The notes beneath the pieces are model-generated. The model ran no database searches. It was not told the origin of the DNA and saw only the letters and a list, made by a program, of their open reading frames with translations. Below are positions 2-20,020 of a stretch of 64,000 nt of DNA, piece after piece. The stretch covers positions 186,001 to 250,000 of IMG/VR virus record IMGVR_UViG_3300031857_000005; one strand, 5' to 3'. Numbering within the stretch: position 1 is the first letter of the stretch; each line of letters begins with the position of its first letter. A program made the translations under genes and the position numbers.

Positions 2-2095
2 GAATTAAAAATCGCATTAAACGTTGGTGATATATTATATTCGGCAGGAACTGGAACCGACTCAACTGTAAGAGTAGACAATGGAAATTTTGCAAATGGT
101 AACTGCTCAATTGTTGCTGGAGGAAGTGGAAATATTAGTGATAGTCAATATTCAACAATCGGTGGTGGATGTAATAACACAATAAATAATTTTACAACAA
201 ATTCTAACTATTATTCGGTAGTTGGGAATTTAATTGGTGGGGGTAATCGTAATACAATTGATTCTAATACGTTAAATGATGCCGATGTTGGTGGATCAGT
301 AATTGGTGGTGGTTATGTAAATCAATTGATTTCACCTTTTTATGGTTTCAACACGGTTAATGGTGGGGTTTTAAATAGAACATTTTTTGATTATAGTACA
401 ATTGGTGGTGGAGCAATCAATGTTAACTTAGATTCGTTTACAACAATCGGTGGTGGAGCATTTAATACAAACTCAAGTTATACATCAACAATCGGTGGTG
501 GTAATAATAATACAATTGGAACTTTATCTTCTTATTATAATGATCCTATTATTGGTCAAACTATAGGTGGTGGATCTTGTAATACAATGTCATCTTATAG
601 TGCTCAGTATTATAATGGTGGTAGTACAATTAGTGGTGGATATTGTAACACAACAGTTTCTTCATATTATGGAGGGCAAACTATATCAGGAGGGTTTAAT
701 AATATAACATCAAGTGATTATGCAACAGTTGGTGGAGGGGTTAGAAACACATCAAGTGGTTATTATTCAACTGTAAGTGGTGGGATTAACAATACATCAA
801 GTTGTGGTGGTTCATTTATTGGTGGTGGTTGTAACAACACATCAAGTTGTAATTATTCTACCGTAAGTGGAGGTTATAGAAATACATCAAGTTGTTGTAA
901 TTCAACAATAGGTGGTGGTAGAAGTAACACAGTAAGTTCTTGTTATTCAACTGTTAGTGGGGGTCGTAACAACGTATCCGGAATTAGCGGAACTATATCA
1001 GGAATTTATGATCAAACATATAATGGAGGAACATTTAGTGGTTATTATGGGTCATATTCACCAACCTCAACATCTTCAGGGTTTGGTAATGGAGGAACAT
1101 TCTCATTTAATTTTAATACGGGAACATTGTCTAACGTTTATGTTAACACAATTGGTCAAAGTTATGTTCAAGGAGATACGTTATTATTTGACGGTACTTT
1201 ATTTGGTGGATCAAGTGGTACTGATGATGTGACAATTAAAATTAATGTGACATCAAGTGGTAATAATTCTACCGTAAGTGGAGGTTATTGTAATACATCA
1301 ATTGGTAGTAGTTCAACAGTAAGTGGTGGTAAAAGAAACACATCAAGTGGTAGTTATTCAACAATTGGAGGTGGTAATGTTAACACATCAAGTTGTTATT
1401 ACTCAACCGTTGGTGGTGGTAGAAATAACACGTCAAGCGATTATTGTTCAACCATTGGTGGTGGTTTTAATAATAAAATTAATCCAGCATCATCCGATAG
1501 TGGTACTATATACGCATCAACAATAGGAGGAGGATCTTGTAATACAATCGGAACATTATCGGCATATTATGATGTATATGGTGCAACAATAGGTGGGGGA
1601 ACTTGTAATACAGTTGGGACATTATCCTCTTATTGTGGTGTGTATAGCTCAACAATTGGTGGAGGTTCCTTTAATATAATATCATCCTACAGTGGATACT
1701 ATGAAATGTATGGTAATACAATAGCTGGTGGTACTTTTAATACAACGGTATCTTCAGAATACAACGGACAAACAATTGGTGGAGGTCGTGGTAATGTAAC
1801 AAGGTATAATTATTCAACTGTAAGTGGGGGTAGAACTAACACATCAAGTGGTTATTATTCAACAATTGGTGGTGGTATAAATAACACATTAATAAATGGT
1901 TGTTCGGCAATACTTGGAGGAATATGTAATACGTCACAACACGATTGTTCATTTATTGTTGGTAGTGGTATATGTAGTACTGCCGCAAACACAACACACG
2001 TAAATTGTCTACATTTCAGTAACATACCTACATCGTCAGCAGGACTTGCACCAGGTACTGTATATAGTGATTCGTGTGTATTAAAAATAGTATAA
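2..2095 (+). CDS. Gly/Ser/Thr-rich beta-repeat fibre/adhesin-like virion protein (5' end lies outside the window)
   Basis: Frame is open from base 2 (ELKIALNVGDILYSAGTG...), so the TTG at 326 is not the true start. About 15-aa repeats S-T-[IV]-[GS]-G-G-x-x-N-T (YadA/AIDA-like beta-roll). C-terminal IPTSSAGLAPGTVYSDSCVLKIV resembles common phage fibre termini. Confidence 0.7.
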   Translation, partial: ELKIALNVGDILYSAGTGTDSTVRVDNGNFANGNCSIVAGGSGNISDSQYSTIGGGCNNTINNFTTNSNYYSVVGNLIGGGNRNTIDSNTLNDADVGGSVIGGGYVNQLISPFYGFNTVNGGVLNRTFFDYSTIGGGAINVNLDSFTTIGGGAFNTNSSYTSTIGGGNNNTIGTLSSYYNDPIIGQTIGGGSCNTMSSYSAQYYNGGSTISGGYCNTTVSSYYGGQTISGGFNNITSSDYATVGGGVRNTSSGYYSTVSGGINNTSSCGGSFIGGGCNNTSSCNYSTVSGGYRNTSSCCNSTIGGGRSNTVSSCYSTVSGGRNNVSGISGTISGIYDQTYNGGTFSGYYGSYSPTSTSSGFGNGGTFSFNFNTGTLSNVYVNTIGQSYVQGDTLLFDGTLFGGSSGTDDVTIKINVTSSGNNSTVSGGYCNTSIGSSSTVSGGKRNTSSGSYSTIGGGNVNTSSCYYSTVGGGRNNTSSDYCSTIGGGFNNKINPASSDSGTIYASTIGGGSCNTIGTLSAYYDVYGATIGGGTCNTVGTLSSYCGVYSSTIGGGSFNIISSYSGYYEMYGNTIAGGTFNTTVSSEYNGQTIGGGRGNVTRYNYSTVSGGRTNTSSGYYSTIGGGINNTLINGCSAILGGICNTSQHDCSFIVGSGICSTAANTTHVNCLHFSNIPTSSAGLAPGTVYSDSCVLKIV

Positions 2096-2152
2096 AAAAT
2101 AATATCAAAAAACATTTCTTAAGAGGAATAAATAAATAAAAAACAAATAAAA

Positions 2153-2344
2153 ATGGAAAACAGAGAAATTAAATTATTGTTTAAATATGAGACACCAGTT
2201 ACTATTGGTGAACATAAAGTAATTGCAATTAGACAAACACCAAAAGGTATTAGATTTAGAACTGAAAATGGTCCTATTTTAAAGGAGGTTGAACGTAAAG
2301 AAACATGGACTGAACAAGAATTGCATGATTTATTGTTGAGTTAA
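2153..2344 (+). CDS. hypothetical protein (63 aa)
   Basis: ATG with A-rich leader; fills the intergenic gap. Confidence 0.6.
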   Translation: MENREIKLLFKYETPVTIGEHKVIAIRQTPKGIRFRTENGPILKEVERKETWTEQELHDLLLS

Positions 2345-2396
2345 TATTTTAAAAAAAATACATATACTTTTACAAACATATTATTAAAATTGTAAT

Positions 2397-3140
2397 ATGT
2401 TTGTAACTGTATGTAATAAAGAATATCTTATTGGTTTTGAGGTAATGTTAAAATCTCTTGTGGAGAATAACCCAAGAGTTATTGAGGAAGATATCCCATT
2501 CACAATTATTAGTAATGATTTAACATCAGATGATTTAATAGTTGCGAGAAAAATTCATAATAATATTTCATTAAAAACCTATGATTCATCAAAATATTAT
2601 GAAATTGATGAGTTAAAAAAACAACAGATGTCGTTTGGTGATTACGCCAAATATGAAATATTTTCTATTGAGGATGTTGATAAAATCATATTTCTTGATT
2701 CCGATACTTTAATATTAGGGAACATTGATAGATTAATTGACTCTGATTATAATTTTGGTGCTGTTAGAGAATTGTATATTGACCAATACAATACCGGAGT
2801 AATAGTCATTTCAAAGAAATATTTAAACCCTAAAATCACAAATGATTTAATCAATTTAACAAAAGTTTATGGAATAACTGAACATTCCGATCAGGATATT
2901 ATAAATCATTACTTTGAAGACGTTATTAAAGATTTCCCAATTGAATATAATTTTTTAAAAACATACAATAAAAAAGTATTCCAAAACACAGGGTTACCTA
3001 AGTACATCAAAATATTACACTACATAGTTAAAAAACCTTGGCAACAAAAAGAATTAGTGTCTTTAGAAGAAGGGACTTTATGGACTGAAAGATATTGGTT
3101 TGATTATTATTCAAAAATACTTAAACTAAAAAATGATTAA
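2397..3140 (+). CDS. glycosyltransferase family 8
   Basis: IIFLDSDTLI (DxD), YNTGVIVI, SDQDIIN, YNF, ILHYIVKKPW motifs. Confidence 0.85.
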   Translation: MFVTVCNKEYLIGFEVMLKSLVENNPRVIEEDIPFTIISNDLTSDDLIVARKIHNNISLKTYDSSKYYEIDELKKQQMSFGDYAKYEIFSIEDVDKIIFLDSDTLILGNIDRLIDSDYNFGAVRELYIDQYNTGVIVISKKYLNPKITNDLINLTKVYGITEHSDQDIINHYFEDVIKDFPIEYNFLKTYNKKVFQNTGLPKYIKILHYIVKKPWQQKELVSLEEGTLWTERYWFDYYSKILKLKND

Positions 3141-4041
3141 AAGACATTACGATAAAAGTGAGTTATTAAACTACGTTGAGTTAGATAAGGATACAACAAC
3201 ATTAGAGAATAAAGTAATATTATTACATTTAGATTCTTTTTGTTTGGGGGATACTATTTGTTTTGCGTCATTTATTGATTCATTTATAGATTACCACAAC
3301 CCAAAAAAAGTTATTGTATCCACATTTTTTCCTCATTTATTAATATCAAATAATGAAAAATGTGAAATTATTAACGCCAATCAACAAAAAAAATTAACAA
3401 TAGATAAATTAATTGATGTTGGTTATGATAAAAATAATATGTCACATACTTTGGGTGGTATGTTGTATGCAACCAAAGATACAATGATGATACCACAATC
3501 AACCGAACCAAAAAAACCAACATTAATACCAAAATTTAAAAACGTTAAATCAAATAAAATAACTATTGCTCCCGAATCATTAAAATCAATTGCTCAATGG
3601 GATAGAGATGGTTGGCAGTTAGTTGTTGATTCTTTGGTTAATTCTGGTTTTGAGGTTTTTAATGTCTCTTACGAAGATACATTAAAATTAAATAATGTTA
3701 AAGGATATCACGGATTTGATGATATCAACGTCTCGTTAAATCACATATTAGAATCAAGATTGTTTATTGGGCTATCTTCGGGATTATCTTGGTTGGCATG
3801 GGCGTATGATGTTCCAGTTGTTATGATTTCAGGTTTTACAAAAGAACACAATGAATTTGATTGTTTTAGAGTTATTAATAAAAACGTTTGTAATGGGTGT
3901 TTTAATTTATTTCCAAATATTAGCACTAAATGTCCGATATTTTTAAATACAGAAAGAGAAAACGAATGTCATAAAAAAATAACACCAAAAATGGTTATAG
4001 AACAAATAAACAAGGCAATTATGTTTACAAACAATAAATAA
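3133..4041 (+). CDS. autotransporter O-heptosyltransferase-like (TibC/Aah, GT-B) glycosyltransferase
   Basis: LGDTICF; FIGLSSGLSWLAWAYDVPVVMISGFT; four-Cys cluster CNGC-x10-C-x11-C resembling the TibC iron finger. Confidence 0.75.
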   Translation: MIKRHYDKSELLNYVELDKDTTTLENKVILLHLDSFCLGDTICFASFIDSFIDYHNPKKVIVSTFFPHLLISNNEKCEIINANQQKKLTIDKLIDVGYDKNNMSHTLGGMLYATKDTMMIPQSTEPKKPTLIPKFKNVKSNKITIAPESLKSIAQWDRDGWQLVVDSLVNSGFEVFNVSYEDTLKLNNVKGYHGFDDINVSLNHILESRLFIGLSSGLSWLAWAYDVPVVMISGFTKEHNEFDCFRVINKNVCNGCFNLFPNISTKCPIFLNTERENECHKKITPKMVIEQINKAIMFTNNK

Positions 4042-4058
4042 AATATTATTATAAATTT

Positions 4059-4946
4059 ATGGAAAAAAAATATTCAATATTTCATATAGAAGGTGGGTTA
4101 GGAAAACATATATGTGCAACTGCGGTTGCAAAATGTATTAAGAATAATTTCCCTGAAAGAGAGTTGATTGTGGTATGTGCTTACCCTGAAATATTTTTAA
4201 ATTTAGAATTTATTGATAGAGTGTATAGAATTGGTAACACACCATATTTCTACGATGACTTCATTAATGATAAAGATTCAAAAATATTTAAACATGAACC
4301 TTATTTCACTGATGAACACATACATAAAAAATTACCTCTAATTGAGAATTGGTGCAAACTGTTTAATTTGAATTATTTAGGAGAGAAACCTGAATTAGTA
4401 TTTAATCTTAGGCAAAAACAAACAGGTATTAACAAATGGAAAAGAGATAAACCTGTGATGGTAATCCAAACAAACGGAGGACCCTTAAATGATCAACCTT
4501 ATCCATATTCTTGGACTAGAGATATTCCGTATGATGTTGCTCAACATTTAGTTAATTATTTTTCACCACAATATCACATAATTCAAATATGTAGAAATGA
4601 AAAAAATGCAATTGCAGGATGTGAAGTTATTACAGAACAAATGTCTAACATGGAATTGTTTTCACTATTGTTTATGTCTGAAAAAAGAATTTTAATTGAT
4701 TCTTGTTTGCAACACGCATCTGCGGCAATGGGAATACCATCAACTGTTTTATGGATAGGTACATCGCCAGTTATGTTTGGTTATAACACACACAAAAATA
4801 TTATTGCAAAATTACCTAACACGGTGAAATTACCTGATAGTTATTTGTTTGATTATAATTTTAATGGGTTAACACATGAATGTCCTTTAATAGATACCGA
4901 TATTTTTGATATCGACGAAATAATATATAATATAAATAATTTTTAA
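4059..4946 (+). CDS. GT9-like (GT-B fold) glycosyltransferase
   Basis: N-terminal IEGGLGKHICAT; C-terminal LIDSCLQHASAAMGIPSTVLW matches the GT9 DSG..H.A.A.G.P motif. Confidence 0.7.
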   Translation: MEKKYSIFHIEGGLGKHICATAVAKCIKNNFPERELIVVCAYPEIFLNLEFIDRVYRIGNTPYFYDDFINDKDSKIFKHEPYFTDEHIHKKLPLIENWCKLFNLNYLGEKPELVFNLRQKQTGINKWKRDKPVMVIQTNGGPLNDQPYPYSWTRDIPYDVAQHLVNYFSPQYHIIQICRNEKNAIAGCEVITEQMSNMELFSLLFMSEKRILIDSCLQHASAAMGIPSTVLWIGTSPVMFGYNTHKNIIAKLPNTVKLPDSYLFDYNFNGLTHECPLIDTDIFDIDEIIYNINNF

Positions 4947-4947
4947 T

Positions 4948-5769
4948 ATGGTAGAAAAGATATTTTTTCAAAGCTCATTACCAAGAGCTGGTTCAACATT
5001 ATTACAAAACATAATGGGGCAAAATCCTGATTTTTATGTTACACCAACTTCAGGTGTTTTAGAACTTGTATATGCCGCAAGAAACAATTACACTAACTCG
5101 CCTGAATTTAAGGCTCAAGATTCTAAATTAATGAAAGATGGGTTCATATCATTTTGTAAAAATGGTATGGAGGGATTTTTTAATGGTGTAACAGATAAAC
5201 CTTATGTTTTAGATAAAAGTAGAGGGTGGGGAGTTCACTATGGTTTTTTAAATTCTTTTTATCCTGAACCTAAAATAATTTGTATGGTTAGAGATCCAAG
5301 ATCAATTTTTGCGTCAATGGAGAAAAATTTTAGGAAAAGTCAACATTTAGATTCAGGATTGGTTAATCATGCTCAAATGGCAGGAACAACGACTGAAAAG
5401 AGAATTGATATATGGGCTCAATCACAACCTGTTGGTTTGGCTTTAGAAAGATTACAACAAATTTTTAGAGAAGGGGTAAACGACAAAATATTGTTTGTTA
5501 GATTTGAGGATTTAACCTCAAGTCCTAAAACAGAAATAGAAAGAATTTATACCTATTTAGGATTACCGTATTATGAAGGTCATGACTTTAATAACGTAAC
5601 TCAAATTACAAAAGAAGATGATTCAATTTATGGTATTTACGGTGATCATGTCATTAAACAACGAATAGAACCTACCAAAAAAGATTATCGGGATATCTTA
5701 GGTGATGATGCTTCTAATTGGATAAAAAACAGATACAAATGGGTATTTAATCAATTTGGTTATTTTTAA
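4948..5769 (+). CDS. PAPS-dependent sulfotransferase
   Basis: 5'-PSB motif SSLPRAGSTLL; 3'-PB motif MVRDPRSIFAS; VRFEDL. Confidence 0.85.
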   Translation: MVEKIFFQSSLPRAGSTLLQNIMGQNPDFYVTPTSGVLELVYAARNNYTNSPEFKAQDSKLMKDGFISFCKNGMEGFFNGVTDKPYVLDKSRGWGVHYGFLNSFYPEPKIICMVRDPRSIFASMEKNFRKSQHLDSGLVNHAQMAGTTTEKRIDIWAQSQPVGLALERLQQIFREGVNDKILFVRFEDLTSSPKTEIERIYTYLGLPYYEGHDFNNVTQITKEDDSIYGIYGDHVIKQRIEPTKKDYRDILGDDASNWIKNRYKWVFNQFGYF

Positions 5770-5774
5770 TTATT

Positions 5775-6233
5775 ATGGAGAATAAAATTTATTGGTTTAC
5801 CGGTCAGCCAGGTGCGGGAAAGACAGTTTTGTCTTTAATGTTAAAAACGGTTTTAGAACTTGACAATAGTAATAAAGTATTTCATATTGATGGAGATGAA
5901 TTAAGAAGTCTTTTTAATAATCAAAAATACGGTAGAGAAGGTCGTGAAGAGAATATAAAACGAGCACAAGATATTGCTAAATTTATATTAGCTCAAGGAC
6001 ATAGTGTTGTTGTTAGTTTGGTTGCACCATACAAAGAACTTAGAGAAAGTCTTAAACAAGAGTTGGGTAATTTGCTTGTTGAGTTTTATGTTCACACTAC
6101 AGATATTAGAGGTAGAGAACATTTTCACACCGACGAATATGAAAAACCAACAGAAAATTATTTAGATATTAATACAACTAATGTTGACCCACAAATATCA
6201 CTAAACCAAATAATAGAACACATTTCAAAATGA
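5775..6233 (+). CDS. cysC: adenylyl-sulfate (APS) kinase
   Basis: WFTGQPGAGKT P-loop, IDGDELR, R.ENI.R, VSLVAPY, YEKP. Confidence 0.9.
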   Translation: MENKIYWFTGQPGAGKTVLSLMLKTVLELDNSNKVFHIDGDELRSLFNNQKYGREGREENIKRAQDIAKFILAQGHSVVVSLVAPYKELRESLKQELGNLLVEFYVHTTDIRGREHFHTDEYEKPTENYLDINTTNVDPQISLNQIIEHISK

Positions 6234-6694
6234 ATTGGGAAGTAAAAAATCACGGAGGAGAACCTACAACAAACGAAAGTAAAAAATATGCAATATTTGT
6301 TGGTAGATACCAACCATACCATTATGGACATATTGAGTTAATACAACAAAAATTAAATCAAGGAATTCCTGCTCTTATTATGGTTAGGGATATTGAACCT
6401 GACGAAAAAAATCCATTTACCACTGAACAAACGGTAAAGATGATTGAGGAATATCATAACTCAAAAGGTGATGATGTTAAAGTTGTTATTATTCCTGATA
6501 TTGAATCTGTTAATTACGGTAGAGGTGTTGGGTATGAAATAAATGAATTCACACCACCAGATAATATTGGATTCATATCTGCAACAGGAATAAGAAACTC
6601 AATTGCTAAAGGTGACGACAAATGGAAAGATATGGTGGACGAATCAATACAAGATTATATAATTAATTTTTTAACATATGCAAATACAAAGTAA
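6230..6694 (+). CDS. small HIGH-superfamily nucleotidyltransferase (NadM/Sat-like; candidate minimal ATP sulfurylase)
   Basis: GRYQPYHYGH (HxGH) and ISATGIR motifs; ATGA overlap with cysC. Confidence 0.7.
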   Translation: MNWEVKNHGGEPTTNESKKYAIFVGRYQPYHYGHIELIQQKLNQGIPALIMVRDIEPDEKNPFTTEQTVKMIEEYHNSKGDDVKVVIIPDIESVNYGRGVGYEINEFTPPDNIGFISATGIRNSIAKGDDKWKDMVDESIQDYIINFLTYANTK

Positions 6695-7118
6695 AACTTA
6701 TCAAATCAGATTTAACACAGATTCAAAAACTGATGATGAAAGATGGAGATTAATTGAAAACGGTAACGAGACATTAGTTTCAGACATCATTATTGATGGA
6801 CACACTCAAACAACTAAAGATTGGTTACCGGAAATTAATGATTATAAATGGCATGTTAGTTGTGTTGGTTATTGTAGTATTGAGAATAATGTTGCATATA
6901 TAAAAACCATAAAAGAAGAATCTGTATTAATTAGACATATTTTAAAAACAGTTAGTTATAGATTTTTAGGAACCTTAACTACAGTTGTTGTTGCATATTC
7001 GTTAGGGGCAACAATTGAGGTTTCGGCATTGCTTGGTGTTGGTGAACTTATTATGAAACCATTTATATATTTTGGTCACGAAAGATTGTGGTATAAATAT
7101 ATAAGAATTAAAAAATAA
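6678..7118 (+). CDS. N-terminal small beta domain fused to a DUF2061-like membrane domain
   Basis: C-terminus RHILKTVSYRFLGTLTTVVVAY...ELIMKPFIYFGHERLW matches DUF2061 as I recall it; two hydrophobic helices. Confidence 0.7.
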   Translation: MQIQSKTYQIRFNTDSKTDDERWRLIENGNETLVSDIIIDGHTQTTKDWLPEINDYKWHVSCVGYCSIENNVAYIKTIKEESVLIRHILKTVSYRFLGTLTTVVVAYSLGATIEVSALLGVGELIMKPFIYFGHERLWYKYIRIKK

Positions 7119-7146
7119 CTTTCTTTCATTGTATTTATAAGATACA

Positions 7147-7641
7147 ATGGAGCAATCAATTACTATACAAAGTATTAATTATGACGGTGAACTTGCTAAT
7201 ATCTTATTTAAACCAGATATTAGCGAAACCGTATATAATTTAGGTGATCAGTTTTTACCTTTTGTGTTTAATTCAAACACAATTAACCCTAATTTAGAAG
7301 TATTTGGGACATATACTATATTAATTTTATTTAATAAATGCCCATATTTTTTAAATGTCCCAAGACTTACTCCTACACCGACACCTACAAATACGCCAAC
7401 TAGAACACCAACACCTACACCAACACCTACGATTACACCTACACCTACGTTCGATCCTTGTAAGGTACCAACACCAACACCAACGGTTACTACAACGCCT
7501 ACGATTACACCTACAAATACACCAACTCCAAGTGTGACTTGTACAAATCCTTGTGGTTGTCCTGAACCAAGTAAAACACCAAAACCAAGTAAAACACCAA
7601 AACCGACACCTACTTGTACAAGTCCTTGTGGTTGCCCATAA
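7147..7641 (+). CDS. Pro-Thr repeat (mucin-like) virion-associated protein with Cys-rich C-terminus
   Basis: Long (PT)n tract; CTNPCGCP and CTSPCGCP motifs; TATTTATA motif upstream. Confidence 0.7.
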
Positions 7642-7694
7642 ACAATTTAATTTTTGATTAAATGTTTTATTGTATTTATATAATGTAATTTAAA

Positions 7695-9632
7695 ATGATA
7701 CATCAAATTTCAATAACAGGAGTAACAGGAACTCCACCATATTCAATATCGGTATGTGATTCAACATACACATATTGTTATTTGGTTACAGGTTCAACAA
7801 CAATACCACCAACATTTACTTTTGATGTTCCATCACCTTTAGATGGAGTTAATAATTTAATTGTAAAAATAACTGATTCTACAGGATGCGAATACTTTGA
7901 ACCTTATAGTTGTCCTCCTACACCGACACCAACACCTACTCTAACACCGACACCAACACCTACCCCAACCGATTTGTGTTATTGTTTAATGGCAGTTAAT
8001 TCATCCATGATGGATGGTTCGTTTGATTATATAGATTGTGATGGATTATCACAATTAAATATTCATGTCCCAAGTGGAATAACATATTATACTTGTGGAT
8101 CTAACCCGACAAACATAATTAATTTATCAATCGGAATAGGTGATTTATGTTCTTTATCCAGTTGTAATCCACCTTTACCTTCATTATCGGCAACACCAAC
8201 TCCTACTCCCACACCTTCGTCATTACCTTTTGCGTTTATTTCAGTTTGGTCGGCATCAACTACAATTGAACTTCCGTATTCACCAACTGGAACTTATTCA
8301 GGAATAATAGATTGGGGTGATGGTAATACATCTGTTAACTCATATGCAAATAGAACTCATACATATTCGATAACAGGTGATTATACTGTAACAATTACAG
8401 GTACAATTGAGGGTTGGGATTTTAATAATTATGCGACATCTTATAAAAACAATATAAAAGAAATATTAAGGTGGGGTCCACTAAAAGGAGAATCAGGTTC
8501 AAACAATGGCATGTTCTATGGTTGTCAAAATTTAATTATAACAGGTGTAACAGATACTATTAATTTAATTGGAATAACAAATTTGAGTAGTATGTTTTTT
8601 GGTTGTACTAGTTTAACTACCGTAAATAATATGGATAGTTGGGATGTATCATCTGTTAATAATATGTCGGGTATGTTTACATTGACATCTAATTTCAATC
8701 AACCAATAGGAAGTTGGGATGTTTCAAATGTTACAAATATGGCATCTATGTTCTCGTTATCCACAAACTTTAACCAAAACATCGGAAGTTGGGATGTTTC
8801 AAACGTTACCAATATGTTGGCTATGTTTTTAGCCGCGGCAAATTTCAATCAACCAATAGGAGGATGGGATGTTTCAAATGTTATCAATATGTCAGCTATG
8901 TTCGCAGGTTCTCAAAATTTCAATCAACCAGTAGGAAGTTGGGATGTTTCAAATGTTACCAATATGTCGTCTATGTTTGGTAATGCAACAAACTTCAATC
9001 AGACAATTGGGGGTTGGGATGTGTCAAATGTTACCAATATGGGTAATATGTTTGGTAATGCAACAAACTTTAACCAAAACATCGGAAGTTGGGATGTTTC
9101 AAATGTTACCGATATGAATGGTATGTTTTTATCGGCAATAAACTTTAACCAAAACATCGGAAGTTGGGATGTTTCAAATGTTACCGTTATGAATGGTATG
9201 TTTAATAATGCTACAAGTTTTAACAATGGAGGTTCTCCAAGTATAAATTTATGGAATGTTTCAGGTGTGACAAATATGTCATTTACTTTTTATACCGCAA
9301 CAAATTTCAATCAACCAATAGGAGGATGGGACGTATCTAATGTAACAAATATGGAAAATATGTTATCATTGGCAACAGTTTTTGATCAACCAATCGGAGG
9401 ATGGGATGTTTCATCAGTAACTAATATGAGTTTTATGTTAAATGGTACGTCATTATCAACACCTAATTATGATTTACTACTCAATGGATGGGCATCATTA
9501 GGAGGTTCATTACAACCCTCAGTTAATTTTAATGCCGGTACTTCTGTATATACGATTGCAACGGCTGGTGTGAGTAGAAATTATTTGACAGGAACCAAGT
9601 TATGGAATATAACTGACGGGGGAGGAATTTAA
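7695..9632 (+). CDS. virion decoration/adhesin: PT linkers, PKD-like domain and BspA/DUF285 26-aa surface repeats
   Basis: (PT)n tracts; IDWGDG..HTYS..G.YTVTITG PKD-like motif; repeats FNQ[PN]IGxWDVSNVTNMxxMF. Confidence 0.85.
   Translation: MIHQISITGVTGTPPYSISVCDSTYTYCYLVTGSTTIPPTFTFDVPSPLDGVNNLIVKITDSTGCEYFEPYSCPPTPTPTPTLTPTPTPTPTDLCYCLMAVNSSMMDGSFDYIDCDGLSQLNIHVPSGITYYTCGSNPTNIINLSIGIGDLCSLSSCNPPLPSLSATPTPTPTPSSLPFAFISVWSASTTIELPYSPTGTYSGIIDWGDGNTSVNSYANRTHTYSITGDYTVTITGTIEGWDFNNYATSYKNNIKEILRWGPLKGESGSNNGMFYGCQNLIITGVTDTINLIGITNLSSMFFGCTSLTTVNNMDSWDVSSVNNMSGMFTLTSNFNQPIGSWDVSNVTNMASMFSLSTNFNQNIGSWDVSNVTNMLAMFLAAANFNQPIGGWDVSNVINMSAMFAGSQNFNQPVGSWDVSNVTNMSSMFGNATNFNQTIGGWDVSNVTNMGNMFGNATNFNQNIGSWDVSNVTDMNGMFLSAINFNQNIGSWDVSNVTVMNGMFNNATSFNNGGSPSINLWNVSGVTNMSFTFYTATNFNQPIGGWDVSNVTNMENMLSLATVFDQPIGGWDVSSVTNMSFMLNGTSLSTPNYDLLLNGWASLGGSLQPSVNFNAGTSVYTIATAGVSRNYLTGTKLWNITDGGGI
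8590..9440 (+). repeat. tandem 78-bp (26-aa) DUF285 repeats, about 11 units
   Basis: Near-identical units, e.g. aaactttaaccaaaacatcggaagttgggatgtttcaaa near 8765, 9065 and 9141. Confidence 0.85.
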
Positions 9633-9679
9633 AAACATTTATTGAGTTTTATTTTTATTTTTTTATTATTAAAATAAAA

Positions 9680-10927
9680 ATGAAAATTTTCATCCAAATC
9701 GCTTCTTATAGAGATCCCCAACTTATACCAACAATTAAAGATTGTATTGATAAATCAAAAAAACCTGAAAATTTAAGATTTGGTATTTGTAGACAATTTC
9801 ATCCTGAAGATGGTTTTGATAATTTAACAGAATATGAGAATGATGATAGATTCAGAATTTTAAATATTCCATATCAAGAATCAACAGGCGTGTGTTGGGC
9901 AAGAAACCAAGTACAACAATTATATAAAGGAGAAAAATACACTCTACAGTTAGATTCTCATATGAGATTTGAACAAGATTGGGATGATACTTTAATTAAA
10001 ATGATTAAAGGATTACAAAAGAATGGCTATAAAAAACCATTATTAACTGGTTATGTCTCATCATTTGATCCTGAAAATGATCCTCAAGGTAGGGTTACCG
10101 ATCCGTGGAGAATGACATTTGATAGATTTACACCTGAAGGTGTTGTATTCTTTTTACCTGAAGTAATTCCTAATTGGAGGGAATTTAGTGAACCAATACC
10201 TTCAAGATTTTACTCCGCACATTTTGCATTTACATTAGGGGAGTTTTCTAAAGAAGTTCAACATGATCCTGAATACTATTTTCACGGTGAAGAAATTTCA
10301 ATTGCAGTAAGAGCATACACTCATGGATATGATTTATTTCATCCACATAGAGTTGTTATTTGGCACGAATACACAAGGAAGGGTAGAACTAAACAATGGG
10401 ACGATGATAAAGAGTGGTATAAAAAAAACGAATCTTGTCATAAAAAGAATAGACAAATACTTGGTATTGATGGAGAATCTTATGAAGGGGATTTAGGTAA
10501 ATATGGTTTTGGTACCGAAAGGACAATTAGAGATTATGAAAAATATTCAGGTATCCTATTTTCTAAAAGAGCAATACAACAATATACAATAGATAAAAAT
10601 TATCCTCCTAATTCATACGATTATGAAACTGAAGAACAATGGTTAGATAGTTTTACAACAATATTCAAACATTGTATTGATATATCATTTGATGGAGTTC
10701 CTGAAAATGATTACGATTTTTGGGTTGTTGCATTTCATAATGAAAAAGATGAAACTTTATTTAGACAAGATGCCGACTCAAACGAAATAAATAGAATGAT
10801 GCAAGATCCTGACAGATACTGTAAAATATGGAGAGAATTCCACACAAAAGAAAAACCTAAGTATTGGGTTGTGTGGCCGTATAGTAAATCAAAAGGATGG
10901 TGTCCAAGATTAACAGGTAATTTATAA
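9680..10927 (+). CDS. GT60 / GlcNAc-transferase family protein (Skp1-hydroxyproline/polypeptide alpha-GlcNAc transferase-like)
   Basis: IFIQIASYRDP, G.CWAR, LQLDSHMRF (DSH), FHGEE, AYTHGYD, WHEY motifs. Confidence 0.8.
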   Translation: MKIFIQIASYRDPQLIPTIKDCIDKSKKPENLRFGICRQFHPEDGFDNLTEYENDDRFRILNIPYQESTGVCWARNQVQQLYKGEKYTLQLDSHMRFEQDWDDTLIKMIKGLQKNGYKKPLLTGYVSSFDPENDPQGRVTDPWRMTFDRFTPEGVVFFLPEVIPNWREFSEPIPSRFYSAHFAFTLGEFSKEVQHDPEYYFHGEEISIAVRAYTHGYDLFHPHRVVIWHEYTRKGRTKQWDDDKEWYKKNESCHKKNRQILGIDGESYEGDLGKYGFGTERTIRDYEKYSGILFSKRAIQQYTIDKNYPPNSYDYETEEQWLDSFTTIFKHCIDISFDGVPENDYDFWVVAFHNEKDETLFRQDADSNEINRMMQDPDRYCKIWREFHTKEKPKYWVVWPYSKSKGWCPRLTGNL

Positions 10928-10932
10928 TTTAT

Positions 10933-11643
10933 ATGGTAACATTTAATGATGTAAAAATAGCTGATGTTGGGTATTATATAAATTTGGATAGTAGGGTTGA
11001 CAGAAAAGATAACCTTGAGTCACAGTTTAATAAATTTAACATAAAGGGGGTTAATAGATTTTCGGCATTTTCAAGTTACCCAAGTAATCCCTCAAATTGT
11101 AAAAAAAGTCATTATCAATTATTTGAATTGTTTTTACAATCAAATTACAATACTATGTTAGTATTAGAAGATGATTGTAAGTTTTTAGATTTTTTAAAGG
11201 ATGAGTCAACCGAAATTTTTGATAAAATTTTAAATACTGATTGGGATTTATTTTGGTTAGGATGTAGAAATAGAAAACCACCAAAAAATTATATTAATAA
11301 TTGTTATTTTACCTCATCAACTTCCGGAGCTCAATCTTACATTATAACAAAAAGATTTGTTGAGTATCTATTATCTACTTTCCCTATTGAACCTAACGAT
11401 AATTTAAGGAACACATCAATTGATGAACTACTGTGTTTATCAATATATGATATTGATGTGGTTAATAACCCAAATAAATATAATTTTTATAATTTAGATC
11501 AACCTTTAGATAATCTACAAACTAAATTTAAATCATTGTGTTATGAAAAGGCACTTACAACACAATATCTTTCATATAGTGATTTATGGGGTACTACTAC
11601 CGATTTAGAATATTATATGATATCATCACACCCAAAACAATAA
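10933..11643 (+). CDS. glycosyltransferase family 25
   Basis: YYINLDSRVDRK, CKKSH, LVLEDD, AQSYII motifs. Confidence 0.8.
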   Translation: MVTFNDVKIADVGYYINLDSRVDRKDNLESQFNKFNIKGVNRFSAFSSYPSNPSNCKKSHYQLFELFLQSNYNTMLVLEDDCKFLDFLKDESTEIFDKILNTDWDLFWLGCRNRKPPKNYINNCYFTSSTSGAQSYIITKRFVEYLLSTFPIEPNDNLRNTSIDELLCLSIYDIDVVNNPNKYNFYNLDQPLDNLQTKFKSLCYEKALTTQYLSYSDLWGTTTDLEYYMISSHPKQ

Positions 11644-11647
11644 TAAT

Positions 11648-12241
11648 ATGAACGGACACTTTATTTACAAAAATTTAATTATTAGTCAACATCCAAATGT
11701 TGGGGAAAAGTTTAAAACACTTATTGACGAATACAAACCATCAAGAGTTTTAGAAATAGGAACTGCGGATGGCGGATTAACATTATTAATAAGAGATTTA
11801 TTAGATAGTGTGGGATTAACTAATACAATAGTACGAACTTATGATGTTAATGAACAAAAAAATTTAAAGTTAAAAGAAAGAAATATTGAGATAATCACAA
11901 AAGATGTTTTTAATTATCCATATTCAGATTTAGAATATCCTGATGAAATCAGAGACTTTATACAAAGTAATGGTAAAACTTTAGTTCTTTGCGATGGAGG
12001 GAGTAAAAAAAATGAATTTAGATTATTATCTCAATTTTTAAAATATGGTGATATTATTATGGCTCACGATTATGCACCAAATGAAAATTATTTTAATGAA
12101 AATATAAAAGATAAAATATGGAATTGGTTAGAAATACAAGATTTTGATATTAATGAAAGTTGTTTAACTTATAATCTTAAACCATATATGGAAGATGAAT
12201 TTCGTTCTGTTGTATGGGTATGTAAAATAAAAGAACAATGA
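11648..12241 (+). CDS. class I SAM-dependent methyltransferase (CmcI/sugar O-methyltransferase-like)
   Basis: VLEIGTADGG motif I; LVLCDGG; IIMAHD. Confidence 0.75.
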   Translation: MNGHFIYKNLIISQHPNVGEKFKTLIDEYKPSRVLEIGTADGGLTLLIRDLLDSVGLTNTIVRTYDVNEQKNLKLKERNIEIITKDVFNYPYSDLEYPDEIRDFIQSNGKTLVLCDGGSKKNEFRLLSQFLKYGDIIMAHDYAPNENYFNENIKDKIWNWLEIQDFDINESCLTYNLKPYMEDEFRSVVWVCKIKEQ

Positions 12242-13920
12242 TTACATTAGTAACTGGTTTATGGGATATTGGTAGAGGTGATTTACAGGAAGGTTGGTCA
12301 CGATCATATCAACACTATTTAGGTAAGTTTGAAGAACTACTAAAAGTAGATAGTAACCTTATTATTTTTGGTGATAAAGAGTTACAAGATTTTGTATCTC
12401 AAAGAAGACAGGTTGAAAACACTCAATTTATTTTGAGGGATTTGAATTGGTTTAAAAATAACGAATATTTCCAATTAATACAAACTATACGAACAAATCC
12501 TGATTGGTTTAACCAAGTTGGGTGGTTAAAGGACTCAACTCAATCTAAATTAGAAATGTATAACCCTTTGGTTATGTCTAAAATGTTTTTACTTAATGAT
12601 GCAAAAATTTTAGATAAATTTAATTCAGATAAACTATTTTGGGTTGATGCCGGTTTAAGTAATACCGTACATATGGGTTATTTTACGCATGATAAAGTTA
12701 TGGATAAAATAGATAAATTATCTGACAAATTTTTATTTATTTGTTTTCCATATAACGCAGAAACTGAAGTTCATGGATTCAAGTATGAAGAAATGAAACG
12801 ATTAACAAACTCAACACCTGATATTGTTGCTCGCGGAGGATTCTTTGGTGGGGATAAGGATTTAATATCACAAATGAATAGTTTGTATTATGGGATATTA
12901 ATTGACACCCTTAAACGAGGTTTTATGGGTACTGAAGAAAGTTTATTTACAATATTAACATACCAATACCCTAACATAATTGATTACTGTGAAATAGAAT
13001 CTAATGGATTAGTTTATAAATTTTTTGAGGATGTTAAAAACAATTTAGTTGTAATAAAAAACTTTGACTCAAAACCAACAATCGTTAAAACTAATTTAGA
13101 AATTAACTCAAATGGGATTGGTTTATATATTATAACATTTAATTCACCAAATCAATTTGAGACATTAATCCAATCAATGTTGAACTATGATACTGATTTT
13201 ATCACAAGAACCAAAAAGTTTTTACTTGATAATTCAACAGATACATCAACAACCCCAAGGTATTTGGAACTTTGTGAACAATATGGTTTTACTCACATAA
13301 AAAAAGATAATATTGGTATAACTGGTGGAAGACAATTTATTGCGGAACATTTTAATGAACAAGAAGATTTAGGTTATTATTTCTTCTTTGAGGACGATAT
13401 GTTATTTCACTCAGGTAAAACCGATGTGTGTAAAAATGGTTTTGGTAGGTATGTTAAAAAACTATTTACCAAATCTTTAAACATACTAAAAAGAGAATCT
13501 TTTGATTTCTTAAAATTAAATTTTACAGAATTTTATGGTTCTAATGATAAACAATGGTCTTGGTATAATGTTCCCCAAGATTTTAGACAATCCCATTGGC
13601 AGAACAATCCAAGGTTACCACAACAAGGGTTGGATCCAAATTCACCAAACACAGAATTCAAATATATTAAATCATTACAGGGGTTACCATATGCGAGTGG
13701 AGAAATCTATTTGTGTAACTGGCCGATTCTAATGTCAAAAGAAGGTAATTATAAGTGTTATTTAAAAACAAAATTTGATCATCCATTTGAACAAACTTTA
13801 ATGTCCCAATGTTTCCAAGAAACCATTAAGGGTAATATCAATCCGGGTTTATTATTAATAACCCCAACTGAACACAATCGTTTCGATCATTATGAATCCT
13901 CATTAAGAAAAGAATGTTAA
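12238..13920 (+). CDS. HtrL/YibB-like domain fused to a GT-A (GT2-like) domain
   Basis: N-terminal TLVTGLWDIGR, FWVDAG, GGFFGG, TEESL; C-terminal domain with GITGGR and YFFFEDD. Confidence 0.7.
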   Translation: MITLVTGLWDIGRGDLQEGWSRSYQHYLGKFEELLKVDSNLIIFGDKELQDFVSQRRQVENTQFILRDLNWFKNNEYFQLIQTIRTNPDWFNQVGWLKDSTQSKLEMYNPLVMSKMFLLNDAKILDKFNSDKLFWVDAGLSNTVHMGYFTHDKVMDKIDKLSDKFLFICFPYNAETEVHGFKYEEMKRLTNSTPDIVARGGFFGGDKDLISQMNSLYYGILIDTLKRGFMGTEESLFTILTYQYPNIIDYCEIESNGLVYKFFEDVKNNLVVIKNFDSKPTIVKTNLEINSNGIGLYIITFNSPNQFETLIQSMLNYDTDFITRTKKFLLDNSTDTSTTPRYLELCEQYGFTHIKKDNIGITGGRQFIAEHFNEQEDLGYYFFFEDDMLFHSGKTDVCKNGFGRYVKKLFTKSLNILKRESFDFLKLNFTEFYGSNDKQWSWYNVPQDFRQSHWQNNPRLPQQGLDPNSPNTEFKYIKSLQGLPYASGEIYLCNWPILMSKEGNYKCYLKTKFDHPFEQTLMSQCFQETIKGNINPGLLLITPTEHNRFDHYESSLRKEC

Positions 13921-19992: not shown

Positions 19993-20020
19993 TAACAATA
20001 AATATCTTCAAATGAAAGTT

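What the first reader, a model, noticed from the sequence alone, without database searches (positions are those of the whole stretch)
2..4041. TibC/Aah-type heptosyltransferase next to a fibre carrying AIDA-like STVSGG repeats
Seen: ORF 3133-4041 has the SSGLSWLAWA motif and a four-Cys cluster. The fibre has at least six STVSGG and many STIGGG repeats. Established: Aah/TibC heptosylate serines in strand-loop-strand repeats (TVNSGG-like) of autotransporter passengers. Inference: the phage has a cognate enzyme-substrate pair for fibre O-glycosylation. No ADP-heptose synthesis genes are in the window, so the sugar donor is unknown.
Basis: partly seen in the sequence, partly recalled or inferred. 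Interest (0 to 1): 0.65.

Follow-up and report, generated by a model that had tools for sequence, protein, structure and literature searches.

The report
TibC-like glycosyltransferase beside phage fibres
A 304-kb freshwater jumbo phage encodes a stripped-down relative of the bacterial enzymes that sugar-coat adhesins, placed next to two serine-rich fibre genes; such pairings recur across many phages, so phages probably glycosylate their own fibres, though the sugar is unknown.

Summary
ORF 3133-4041 carries SSGLSWLAWA and a four-Cys cluster. The adjacent ORF, cut at its 5' end, has 6 STVSGG and 9 STIGGG motifs.

The enzyme is a true TibC/Aah homologue: TIGR04414 E 2.5e-35, and TibC is the best fold match (TM 0.76-0.79). 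The catalytic Asp, W305 and all four metal-finger Cys are kept.

It is not an equivalog. It scores 122 bits against a cut-off of 200. It lacks the N-terminal beta-barrel and the thumb tip. Three of the four ADP-heptose contact residues are replaced. It belongs to a phage-only clade of ~300-aa proteins.

The fibre is not AIDA-like. Its period is 15 residues, it gives no TIGR04415 hit (an E. coli control gives 676 bits), and it resembles trimeric-adhesin-head or ice-binding beta-rolls.

The complete 304-kb phage has no GmhA or HldE-type kinase, so heptose is unsupported.

The enzyme-fibre link is supported by position. Large Gly/Ser/Thr-rich repeat ORFs lie within 10 kb of BAHT-like genes in 34 of 40 viral records, against 2 of 40 control windows. 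This includes a distant tier of full-length BAHT domains beside collagen-like giants.

Most likely this is fibre O-glycosylation within a glycosylation and sulfation island. It is untested biochemically.

The parts
2..2095 (+). C-terminal 697 aa of a 966-aa fibre-like protein built of 15-residue [IV][SG]GGxxNTSSxxYST repeats (beta-solenoid), with one ~100-aa inserted domain. Putative acceptor.
   Evidence: Homologues carry PF21300, PF18792, PF13884 and PF05658. Model residues 685-940 form a beta-solenoid; the match to the UspA1 head is Z 17.1 with 36% identity.
2153..2344 (+). Conserved 63-aa ORF between the fibre and the GT genes. Function unknown.
   Evidence: A 64-aa counterpart sits at the same position in L018.
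2397..3140 (+). GT8-family glycosyltransferase. Its stop overlaps the start of the next gene by 8 nt.
   Evidence: PF01501, 77 bits against a cut-off of 24.3. Conserved in L003, L006 and L018.
3133..4041 (+). Short (302 aa) TibC/Aah-like GT-B glycosyltransferase. It is the catalytic core plus the Cys4 finger, without the N-terminal barrel or thumb tip.
   Evidence: TIGR04414 E 2.5e-35, 122 bits, profile positions 77-373. TibC 4rap by sequence E 1.8e-16. Model pLDDT 89. Foldseek to TibC TM 0.76-0.79. Residue mapping.
3250..3252 (+). Asp40, equivalent to the TibC catalytic base Asp110.
   Evidence: Invariant in 20 short and 40 fused viral homologues.
3775..3804 (+). SSGLSWLAWA motif. It includes W220 (TibC W305, a heptose O4 contact) and S215 (TibC P300 / Aah S294 position).
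   Evidence: Residue roles from PMC4358343.
3889..3969 (+). Four-Cys cluster C253, C256, C267, C279, equivalent to the TibC iron-finger C339, C342, C358, C370.
   Evidence: Residue roles from PMC4358343.
4059..4946 (+). Virus-specific GT9-like protein (295 aa) that follows the TibC-like gene in most relatives.
   Evidence: PF01075 E 0.088 and phrog_8954. Atlas clusters are 100% viral, some with PF01075. Synteny.
4948..5769 (+). Sulfotransferase.
   Evidence: PF13469, 83.6 bits.
5775..6233 (+). APS kinase.
   Evidence: PF01583, 69 bits.
6230..6694 (+). Small HIGH-motif nucleotidyltransferase (cytidylyltransferase-like). It is the only one in the genome. It is not RfaE-domain-II-like.
   Evidence: PF01467, 32.7 bits; best matches are NMN adenylyltransferases.
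6678..7118 (+). DUF2061 membrane protein. It travels with the sulfation genes.
9680..13920 (+). Further glycan-building genes of the island: GT60-type GlcNAc transferase, GT25, a CmcI-like methyltransferase and an HtrL_YibB-like protein.

Best explanation
ORF 3133-4041 encodes a phage-specific, minimal member of the TibC/Aah (BAHT) glycosyltransferase superfamily. It keeps the GT-B catalytic core with the Asp base and the Cys4 metal finger. It has lost the N-terminal beta-barrel and the thumb tip that build the bacterial dodecamer.

The gene sits in a co-directional island of about 12 kb. The island holds GT8, this enzyme, a GT9-like partner, a sulfotransferase, an APS kinase, a nucleotidyltransferase, GT60, GT25 and a methyltransferase. 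It starts immediately downstream of two paralogous fibre genes.

Most likely the enzyme works in the infected cell's cytoplasm. It would attach the first sugar to Ser/Thr hydroxyls exposed on the turns of the fibres' 15-residue beta-roll repeats, and possibly to two more such proteins elsewhere in the genome. The neighbouring transferases would then extend and sulfate the glycan before virion assembly.

Shown: homology, fold, conserved catalytic and metal residues, repeat architecture, and non-random co-location. Inferred: catalytic activity, the acceptor, and the order of steps. The sugar donor is host-supplied and undetermined. Heptose is not supported.
For: Homology and fold.

Conserved residues: D40, W220 and the four Cys are invariant across 60 viral homologues.

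Gene packing: the genes are tightly packed, with overlapping stop and start codons, and no terminator-like site lies between the fibre and the GTs on the + strand.

Synteny: the enzyme lies next to big G/S/T/N-rich fibres in relatives at 59-79% identity, even where the fibre repeat type differs. These include 17-aa NIAxG repeats and collagen-like GXY repeats.

Neighbour test: 34 of 40 enzyme-centred windows hold such an ORF, against 2 of 40 control windows from the same records (Fisher p 8e-14, paired discordant 32:0). After dereplication at 70% identity, 15 of 20 clusters are positive.

Independent arrangement: in the distant 'fused' tier (34-39% identity, TIGR04414 227-297 bits, above cut-off) the gene order differs and the partner is divergently oriented. 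The partner is still a giant Ser/Thr-rich collagen-like protein. In L137 and L139 it also carries the same 15-aa STIGGG repeats as the window fibre.

Precedent: bacterial BAHTs are encoded next to their beta-solenoid acceptors (PMC4358343). The solved TibA acceptor fragment is among the structural matches of the fibre model (Z 14.8).
Against: There is no biochemical evidence.

In homologues at 55-56% identity (L100, L101) the gene lies among replication genes (GyrB/Toprim, UvdE, DnaJ, RNR, PolB). No fibre or GT9-like partner lies within the held flanks, 5-10 kb a side.

A related 309-kb phage contig with the same fibre type and the GT9-like/sulfation genes shows no TibC-like gene within 10 kb of the fibre.

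Two further STxGG proteins of this phage lie about 70 kb away, with no Pfam-recognisable glycosyltransferase among the ten neighbouring ORFs scanned.

In TibC, deleting the N-terminal barrel abolishes activity (PMC4358343), and this protein lacks the barrel.

The records in the neighbour test are related to one another, so they are not fully independent.
Confidence: 0.55

Rival explanations
1. The enzyme would be a true Aah/TibC equivalog that uses ADP-heptose to heptosylate serines in AIDA-like strand-loop-strand repeats of the fibre.
For: TIGR04414 is the best family match. The catalytic Asp, W305 and the Ser at the Aah S294 position are kept. JGI pipelines already name homologues 'autotransporter strand-loop-strand O-heptosyltransferase'. 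The GT9 relatives WaaC and WaaF are the next structural neighbours.
Against: The score is 122 bits against a cut-off of 200. The beta-phosphate contacts T226 and K230 and the adenine contact R286 are replaced in all 20 short-clade members. The fibres give no TIGR04415 hit at E<=10, while the control gives 676 bits. The fibre period is 15, against 18/36 in the control. The complete phage genome has no GmhA or PfkB kinase, and none of 39 related viral records has GmhA. The host's heptose metabolism is unknown.
Confidence: 0.15
2. The enzyme glycosylates something other than the adjacent fibres. Candidates are other virion or secreted phage proteins, such as the PT-rich and DUF285 proteins at 7147-9632, or a host envelope glycan such as the LPS core. 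Its position near the fibres would then only reflect a general 'surface decoration' island.
For: The island holds at least six other transferases and two Pro/Thr-rich proteins. GT9 enzymes classically act on LPS. In L100 and L101 the gene is not near fibres. L102 keeps the fibres without a nearby TibC-like gene.
Against: TibC is much the closest fold (TM 0.76-0.79), against about 0.5 for WaaC/WaaF. The enrichment for Ser/Thr-rich repeat giants next to BAHT-like genes holds in two deeply separated viral clades with different gene orders.
Confidence: 0.18
3. The protein is a non-catalytic fibre-binding or assembly factor, like Burkholderia BimC. BimC is a BAHT homologue that binds its autotransporter partner but lacks transferase activity.
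For: The BimC precedent comes from PMC6439308. The protein has lost the barrel and three donor-contact residues. The Cys4 finger, which contacts the acceptor helix in TibC (PMC4358343), is fully kept.
Against: The catalytic Asp, the GD motif, W305 and other C-lobe residues (E241, R246) are invariant across the clade. The gene is embedded among sugar-building enzymes.
Confidence: 0.07
4. The protein is a DNA-modifying glycosyltransferase. GT-B enzymes such as T4 beta-glucosyltransferase act on hydroxymethylated bases.
For: In L100 and L101 the homologue lies between topoisomerase/gyrase-like, UvdE, RNR and PolB genes. The phage encodes a thymidylate-synthase-family protein.
Against: The ThyA-family hit looks like an ordinary thymidylate synthase (200 bits), and no hydroxymethylase was identified. 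The closest fold is a protein O-glycosyltransferase. In this phage the gene is in a fibre and sulfation island.
Confidence: 0.05

Closest known systems
TibC / Aah bacterial autotransporter heptosyltransferases (BAHT family, TIGR04414; PDB 4RAP, 4RB4)
   Same: Best sequence and fold match. Shares the GT-B core, the catalytic Asp110 equivalent, W305, Ser at the Aah S294 position, and the four-Cys (iron-finger) cluster. Also encoded beside a Ser-rich beta-solenoid repeat protein.
   Different: The phage protein is 302 aa against 406 aa. It has no N-terminal beta-barrel (residues 1-97), which TibC needs for activity. The thumb tip (F265/V266) is deleted, so the dodecamer ring is unlikely. T226, K230 and R286 are replaced, with an invariant Lys three residues upstream. 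It scores below the family cut-off and sits on a 3.2 substitutions/site branch, separate from all bacterial members. The partner is a phage fibre, not an autotransporter.
Full-length BAHT domains fused to GT4 and methyltransferase domains in other phages (e.g. Microcystis phage Mel-JY01 WWT39291.1, megaphage LR756501, many IMG/VR contigs)
   Same: Viral, with the same catalytic and Cys4 residues. Thumb tip deleted and R286 replaced. Adjacent to giant Ser/Thr-rich repeat proteins.
   Different: These keep the barrel, T226 and K230. They score 227-297 bits (above cut-off). They are C-terminal domains of proteins of about 670 to 1450 aa. The window's enzyme is a free-standing short form, only 32-39% identical.
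BimC of Burkholderia (BAHT homologue without transferase activity)
   Same: An iron-binding BAHT relative encoded next to, and binding, its repeat-protein partner.
   Different: BimC is reported to be inactive. The phage clade keeps the catalytic Asp and lies among glycan-building genes.
LPS heptosyltransferases WaaC/WaaF (GT9, PF01075)
   Same: Same GT-B superfamily. Weak Pfam and NCBIfam hits (E ~1e-3).
   Different: Much poorer structural match (TM ~0.5). They have no Cys4 finger and use a lipid A-core acceptor.
Trimeric autotransporter adhesin heads (UspA1, YadA, BpaC) and ice-binding beta-rolls (Lolium LbR, MpAFP), as comparators for the fibre
   Same: Repeats of 14-15 residues rich in Gly, Ser, Thr and Asn. 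The fibre model aligns to the UspA1 head with 36% identity (Z 17.1). Homologues carry PF18792, PF21300 and PF05658.
   Different: The fibre's own sequence gives no above-threshold Pfam hit. It has no membrane anchor, sits in a phage context, and has an inserted ~100-aa domain. The handedness and oligomeric state of the solenoid are not established.
Mycobacteriophage virion glycosylation (Freeman et al. 2023, cited in PMC12619734)
   Same: Phage-encoded transferases decorate virion proteins with O-linked glycans.
   Different: Those are different enzyme families. Their acceptors are C-terminal tails of capsid and tail-tube subunits, not repeat fibres. No sulfation module is involved.

Membership tests
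BAHT / TIGR04414 (hepto_Aah_TibC equivalog) | HMM score at or above the curated cut-off (200 bits) over the full profile | tested here: not met
   122.2 bits, E 2.5e-35, profile positions 77-373 of 374. The result is the same in the genome search.
BAHT / TIGR04414 | TibC-type GT-B catalytic fold | tested here: met
   The AF2 model has pLDDT 89. The top Foldseek hits are all TibC chains, E 1.5e-15, TM 0.76-0.79. WaaC/WaaF reach only ~0.5.
BAHT / TIGR04414 | Catalytic base Asp110 (GD motif) | tested here: met
   D40 aligns to D110 and is invariant in 60 viral homologues.
BAHT / TIGR04414 | Four-Cys iron finger (C339, C342, C358, C370) | tested here: met
   C253, C256, C267 and C279 align and are invariant. 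Metal identity is not testable here.
BAHT / TIGR04414 | N-terminal beta-barrel (residues 1-97), required for TibC activity | tested here: not met
   Occupancy of reference residues 1-70 is 0.09 in the short clade and 0.96 in fused viral forms. There is no PF21129 hit. The role of the barrel is from PMC4358343.
BAHT / TIGR04414 | Beta-hairpin thumb (F265/V266) that builds the dodecamer | tested here: not met
   The tip residues are gapped in all 60 viral sequences.
BAHT / TIGR04414 | ADP-heptose contact residues T226, K230, R286 and W305 | tested here: not met
   Only W305 is kept. T226 becomes L/I, K230 becomes A/S (with an invariant K at position 227), and R286 becomes A/S. Residue roles are from PMC4358343.
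BAHT / TIGR04414 | Adjacent acceptor with TIGR04415 strand-loop-strand repeats in an autotransporter | tested here: not met
   The phage fibres give 0 hits at E<=10. An E. coli AIDA-like autotransporter gives 676.5 bits in 30 stretches. The periods are 15 and 18/36.
BAHT / TIGR04414 | Heptosyltransferase activity on protein Ser | not testable with these tools
   This needs biochemistry. The phage has no GmhA or PfkB kinase.
YadA/UspA1-type head or ice-binding beta-roll repeat proteins (for the fibre) | Above-threshold match to PF05658, PF18792 or PF21300, or a clear structural match | tested here: inconclusive
   The fibre's own sequences hit only below threshold (PF18792 E 0.039, PF21300 E 0.01). 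Homologues carry these families. The fibre model is confident only at residues 685-940. There the UspA1 head matches at Z 17.1 with 36% identity, but generic solenoids score similarly.
Glycosyltransferase family 8 (ORF 2397-3140) | PF01501 above the gathering score | tested here: met
   77.2 bits against 24.3.

The most novel reading that the evidence does not exclude
Tailed phages may have recruited BAHT-type Ser/Thr O-glycosyltransferases repeatedly, or anciently, to hyperglycosylate their own repetitive fibres. These fibres are beta-roll and collagen-like GTS-triplet giants. The window's clade would be a minimal form with no barrel or thumb, probably not a dodecamer, and with a re-wired donor site. 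It would use a sugar other than ADP-heptose and feed a glycan that is then sulfated by a phage-encoded PAPS module. Sulfated glycoprotein fibres on a bacteriophage would be new.
Probability: 0.35. Interest if true: 0.8.

Novelty: new variant of a known kind. Interest (0 to 1): 0.62.

Why it matters
Virion glycosylation in phages is known from only a few systems. BAHT enzymes are known only as partners of bacterial autotransporter adhesins.

If phages use BAHT-type enzymes on their fibres, this would extend the family to a new acceptor class and a new biological setting. It would give a testable route to how jumbo phages tune host recognition, or shield their fibres from proteases and other damage. 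It would also provide a natural minimal BAHT, without barrel or thumb, for dissecting what those modules do.

The co-located PAPS and sulfotransferase genes raise the possibility of sulfated phage glycoproteins.

The enzyme-fibre pairing is frequent. At least 546 BAHT-like stretches were found in IMG/VR, and 34 of 40 sampled records have an adjacent Ser/Thr-rich giant. It is therefore a general feature of aquatic phages rather than a curiosity of one genome.

Tried and rejected
No binding test was run and none is claimed.
- The full-length fibre fold was poor (mean pLDDT 49). Only residues 685-940 are usable.
- Promoter and terminator scans gave counts equal to shuffles and are uninformative.
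- PADLOC gave no hits for five island proteins.
- PHROGs gave nothing for the enzyme or the fibre.
- tblastn of the fibre against cultured or deposited phages found no match.
- BLASTP of the TibC-like protein against the GT9-like neighbour showed no significant similarity, so they are not recent paralogues.
- Whole-record searches of the JGI contigs behind L102 and L103 were not possible, as the records are not held. The absence of a TibC-like gene in L102 is therefore known only for +-10 kb.
- The apparent short Lentisphaerota ORFs nest inside long-form bacterial clades and were not pursued.
- The careful ML tree did not finish, so the quick IQ-TREE result is quoted.
- Literature searches for phage + TibC/heptosyltransferase, collagen-like + phage + heptosyltransferase, and Mel-JY01 found nothing relevant.
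- Read laying was not used. No alternative genetic code was needed or used.

Full report
WHAT THE WINDOW IS

The window is bases 265-64264 of a 118.6-kb IMG/VR viral contig. An identical stretch lies in a 304,365-bp record that CheckV rates as complete (G001/L005). A tail sheath, a B-family DNA polymerase and an SNF2 helicase mark it as a jumbo myovirus with about 31% G+C. The sequence is held nearly whole in lake and freshwater metagenomes from many studies. The host is unknown. A SprB-repeat protein, DnaJ and a resemblance to recently described aquatic jumbo phages with predicted Bacteroidota hosts (PMC12619734) are only hints.

OBSERVATION

- ORF 3133-4041 (302 aa) carries SSGLSWLAWA at residues 215-224 and Cys at 253, 256, 267 and 279.
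- The ORF at 2-2095 is truncated by both the window and the contig. The whole gene is 966 aa (L005:6063-8963).
- It contains STVSGG x6, STIGGG x9 and ST[IV][SG]GG x17. Shuffles of the same protein give a mean of 0.018.
- The unit is a 15-residue repeat, [IV][SG]GGxxNTSSxxYST, sometimes stretched to 22-24 residues, with one inserted domain of about 100 aa.
- A paralogous 959-aa fibre lies directly upstream, outside the window.

THE ENZYME

It is a real relative of TibC/Aah.
- TIGR04414 is the best NCBIfam hit, at E 2.5e-35.
- TibC is the only significant PDB sequence match, at E 1.8e-16.
- A confident AF2 model (pLDDT 89) finds TibC chains first (TM 0.76-0.79, E 1.5e-15). The LPS heptosyltransferases WaaC and WaaF follow far behind at TM ~0.5.

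I mapped the residues that Yao et al. defined (PMC4358343) through an E. coli TibC orthologue (L013).
- Kept: catalytic Asp110 (as D40), W305, and all four iron-finger cysteines. These are invariant in 20 short and 40 fused viral homologues. Position 300 is Ser, as in Aah.
- Not kept: the beta-phosphate contacts T226 and K230 become L/I and A/S, with an invariant Lys three residues upstream. The adenine contact R286 becomes A/S. The tip of the beta-hairpin thumb is deleted. The N-terminal beta-barrel (residues 1-97) is absent. In TibC, deleting that barrel abolishes activity.

The score of 122 bits is below the curated 200-bit cut-off. The protein therefore belongs to the BAHT superfamily but is not an Aah/TibC equivalog.

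It forms a distinct clade. The word search found 1382 metagenomic homologues; the 120 best listed are mostly about 300 aa and 55-90% identical. In 185,579 bacterial and archaeal species genomes the best relatives are at most 43% identical over partial matches and about 35% or less over near-full-length ones, and they are of the long form, with a median of 433 aa. A quick ML tree separates the clade with SH-aLRT 100 on a branch of 3.2 substitutions per site.

THE FIBRE

It is not AIDA-like in the family sense.
- An E. coli AIDA-type autotransporter, used as a positive control, scores 676 bits in 30 stretches on TIGR04415. The phage fibres give nothing even at E<=10.
- The control repeats every 18/36 residues around a 'VSSGGSA' motif. 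The fibre repeats every 15 residues.
- Fibre homologues carry PF21300 (grass ice-binding beta-roll), PF18792 (UspA1 repeat), PF05658 and the tail-fibre chaperone domain PF13884.
- The confident part of the model (residues 685-940) is a beta-solenoid. Its best sequence-similar match is the UspA1 head, at 36% identity and Z 17.1. The glycosylated TibA fragment also appears at Z 14.8, as do many generic solenoids.

The acceptor hypothesis therefore rests on general architecture, meaning Ser/Thr on solenoid turns. It does not rest on repeat homology.

THE DONOR

The complete genome has no SIS-type isomerase (GmhA) and no PfkB kinase. Its single cytidylyltransferase-like gene (6230-6694) resembles NMN adenylyltransferases rather than RfaE domain II. 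None of 39 other BAHT-bearing viral records has GmhA. Four have sub-threshold RfaE-II-like genes. Together with the altered nucleotide contacts, this means heptose cannot be asserted.

CONTEXT

The genes from 2153 to 13920 are co-directional and tightly packed. In order they are:
- a 63-aa ORF
- GT8
- the TibC-like gene
- a virus-specific GT9-like gene
- a sulfotransferase
- an APS kinase
- a nucleotidyltransferase
- DUF2061
- two Pro/Thr-rich proteins, one with DUF285 repeats
- a GT60 GlcNAc-transferase
- GT25
- a CmcI-like methyltransferase
- an HtrL_YibB-like protein

. This is a glycan-building and sulfation island abutting fibre genes.

COMPARATIVE TEST

Relatives at 59-79% identity keep the enzyme beside large G/S/T/N-rich ORFs even where the repeat type changes. 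Examples are 17-aa NIAxG repeats in L003 and a 1582-aa collagen-like GXY protein in L017.

A profile scan of IMG/VR found at least 546 BAHT-like stretches. They fall into two tiers.
- The short clade, as in the window.
- A 'fused' tier, in which a full-length BAHT domain (227-297 bits, above cut-off, barrel present) ends proteins of about 670 to 1450 aa that, where scanned, also carry other glycosyltransferase domains. Mel-JY01 and a 735-kb megaphage have the same layout.

I then compared 40 records, each at least 60 kb long. For each I asked whether the enzyme-centred window of up to +-10 kb holds a qualifying ORF. To qualify, an ORF had to be at least 400 aa and have either eight or more [ST][IVLF][IVSGA]GG motifs or at least 50% G+S+T+N. 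The control was a 20-kb window half a contig away in the same record.
- All records: 34 of 40 against 2 of 40 (Fisher p 8e-14; paired discordant 32:0).
- Short clade: 13 of 15 against 2 of 15.
- Fused tier: 21 of 25 against 0 of 25.
- After dereplication at 70% identity: 15 of 20 clusters remain positive.

In the fused tier the partner is usually divergently transcribed, from a few bp to a few kb away, and is a collagen-like GTS/GSS-triplet giant of up to 3098 aa. In L137 and L139 it also contains the same 15-aa STIGGG repeats as the window's fibre. Different gene orders with the same kind of partner argue for functional coupling rather than inherited synteny alone.

COUNTER-EVIDENCE

- Homologues at 55-56% identity sit among replication genes, without a fibre or GT9-like partner in the held flanks.
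- A related 309-kb contig keeps the fibres, the GT9-like gene and the sulfation genes, but has no TibC-like gene within 10 kb.
- This phage has two more STxGG proteins about 70 kb away, with no Pfam-recognisable glycosyltransferase among the ten neighbouring ORFs scanned.
- BimC shows that a BAHT relative can be a non-catalytic binder (PMC6439308).

MECHANISM, WITH STATUS OF EACH STEP

Shown: a TibC-fold protein with intact catalytic Asp and Cys4 finger is encoded 1 kb downstream of Ser/Thr-rich beta-roll fibres, inside a transferase and sulfation island. This type of pairing is strongly non-random across viral records.

Inferred:
- The enzyme O-glycosylates Ser/Thr on the fibre turns in the cytoplasm.
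- The other transferases extend the glycan, and the sulfotransferase uses phage-boosted PAPS to sulfate it.
- Without barrel and thumb, the enzyme does not form the TibC dodecamer.

Unknown: the sugar, the sites and the biological pay-off.

NOVELTY

Annotation pipelines already transfer the BAHT name to these proteins. I found no paper connecting BAHT-type enzymes with phages or collagen-like fibres. I rate this as a new variant of a known kind.

NOT DONE

No biochemical inference beyond homology is possible with these tools.

Noticed in passing
window 4948-7118: A sulfotransferase, an APS kinase, a 154-aa HIGH-motif nucleotidyltransferase and DUF2061 form a conserved block, also seen in L018, L006 and L102. 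The complete 304-kb genome has no canonical ATP sulfurylase (PF01747) and no CysD-type protein (PF01507). The small nucleotidyltransferase could be a minimal ATP sulfurylase that completes a phage PAPS pathway.
   Followed up: partly
window 7147-10927: Two proteins with long PTPTPT linkers lie just upstream of a GT60-type (PF11397) GlcNAc transferase. One is 164 aa; the other is 645 aa with DUF285 repeats. In protists this enzyme family O-GlcNAcylates Thr/Hyp in mucin-like stretches, which suggests a second enzyme-substrate pair in the same island.
   Followed up: no
IMG/VR loci L126-L176 (e.g. L143:10893-19097, L164:11561-20854, L175:11608-17784): Full-length BAHT domains (above the TIGR04414 cut-off), fused to other GT domains, are widespread in viral contigs. 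They sit next to giant collagen-like GTS/GSS-triplet proteins of up to 3098 aa, usually divergently oriented. L137 and L139 combine collagen-like and 15-aa STIGGG repeats in one protein.
   Followed up: partly
G003 (record of L104): 11965-12975 and 26832-27653: One phage record carries both a fused full-length BAHT domain (297 bits, in a 1503-aa ORF) and the short form (124 bits). The two types are therefore not mutually exclusive.
   Followed up: no
G001:259133-264934 (outside the window): Two more STxGG-repeat proteins lie in a structural-looking module, with no Pfam-recognisable glycosyltransferase among the ten neighbouring ORFs scanned. One is 1038 aa with 45 motifs; the other is 484 aa with 15. 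A neighbouring protein has SprB repeats, typical of Bacteroidota gliding adhesins, which is a possible host hint.
   Followed up: partly
window 18901-19998 (-): An Fe/Mn superoxide dismutase domain is preceded by an N-terminal extension of about 165 aa with no family match.
   Followed up: no
window 24682-28254: The tail sheath protein is unusually long (1190 aa). Only the C-terminal ~220 aa match sheath profiles. The nearest cultured relative is Microcystis phage Mel-JY01, at ~30% identity.
   Followed up: no
window 2153-2344: A 63-aa ORF between the fibre and GT8 is conserved in position and sequence in a 64%-identity relative (L018:8995-9189). It has no family match.
   Followed up: partly
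L100:10001-10996 and L101:5246-6220: Short-clade homologues with an N-terminal extension of ~25 aa sit between a GyrB/Toprim gene and UvdE, near DnaJ, RNR and PolB. This is a quite different context, and it leaves a non-fibre role open for part of the clade.
   Followed up: partly
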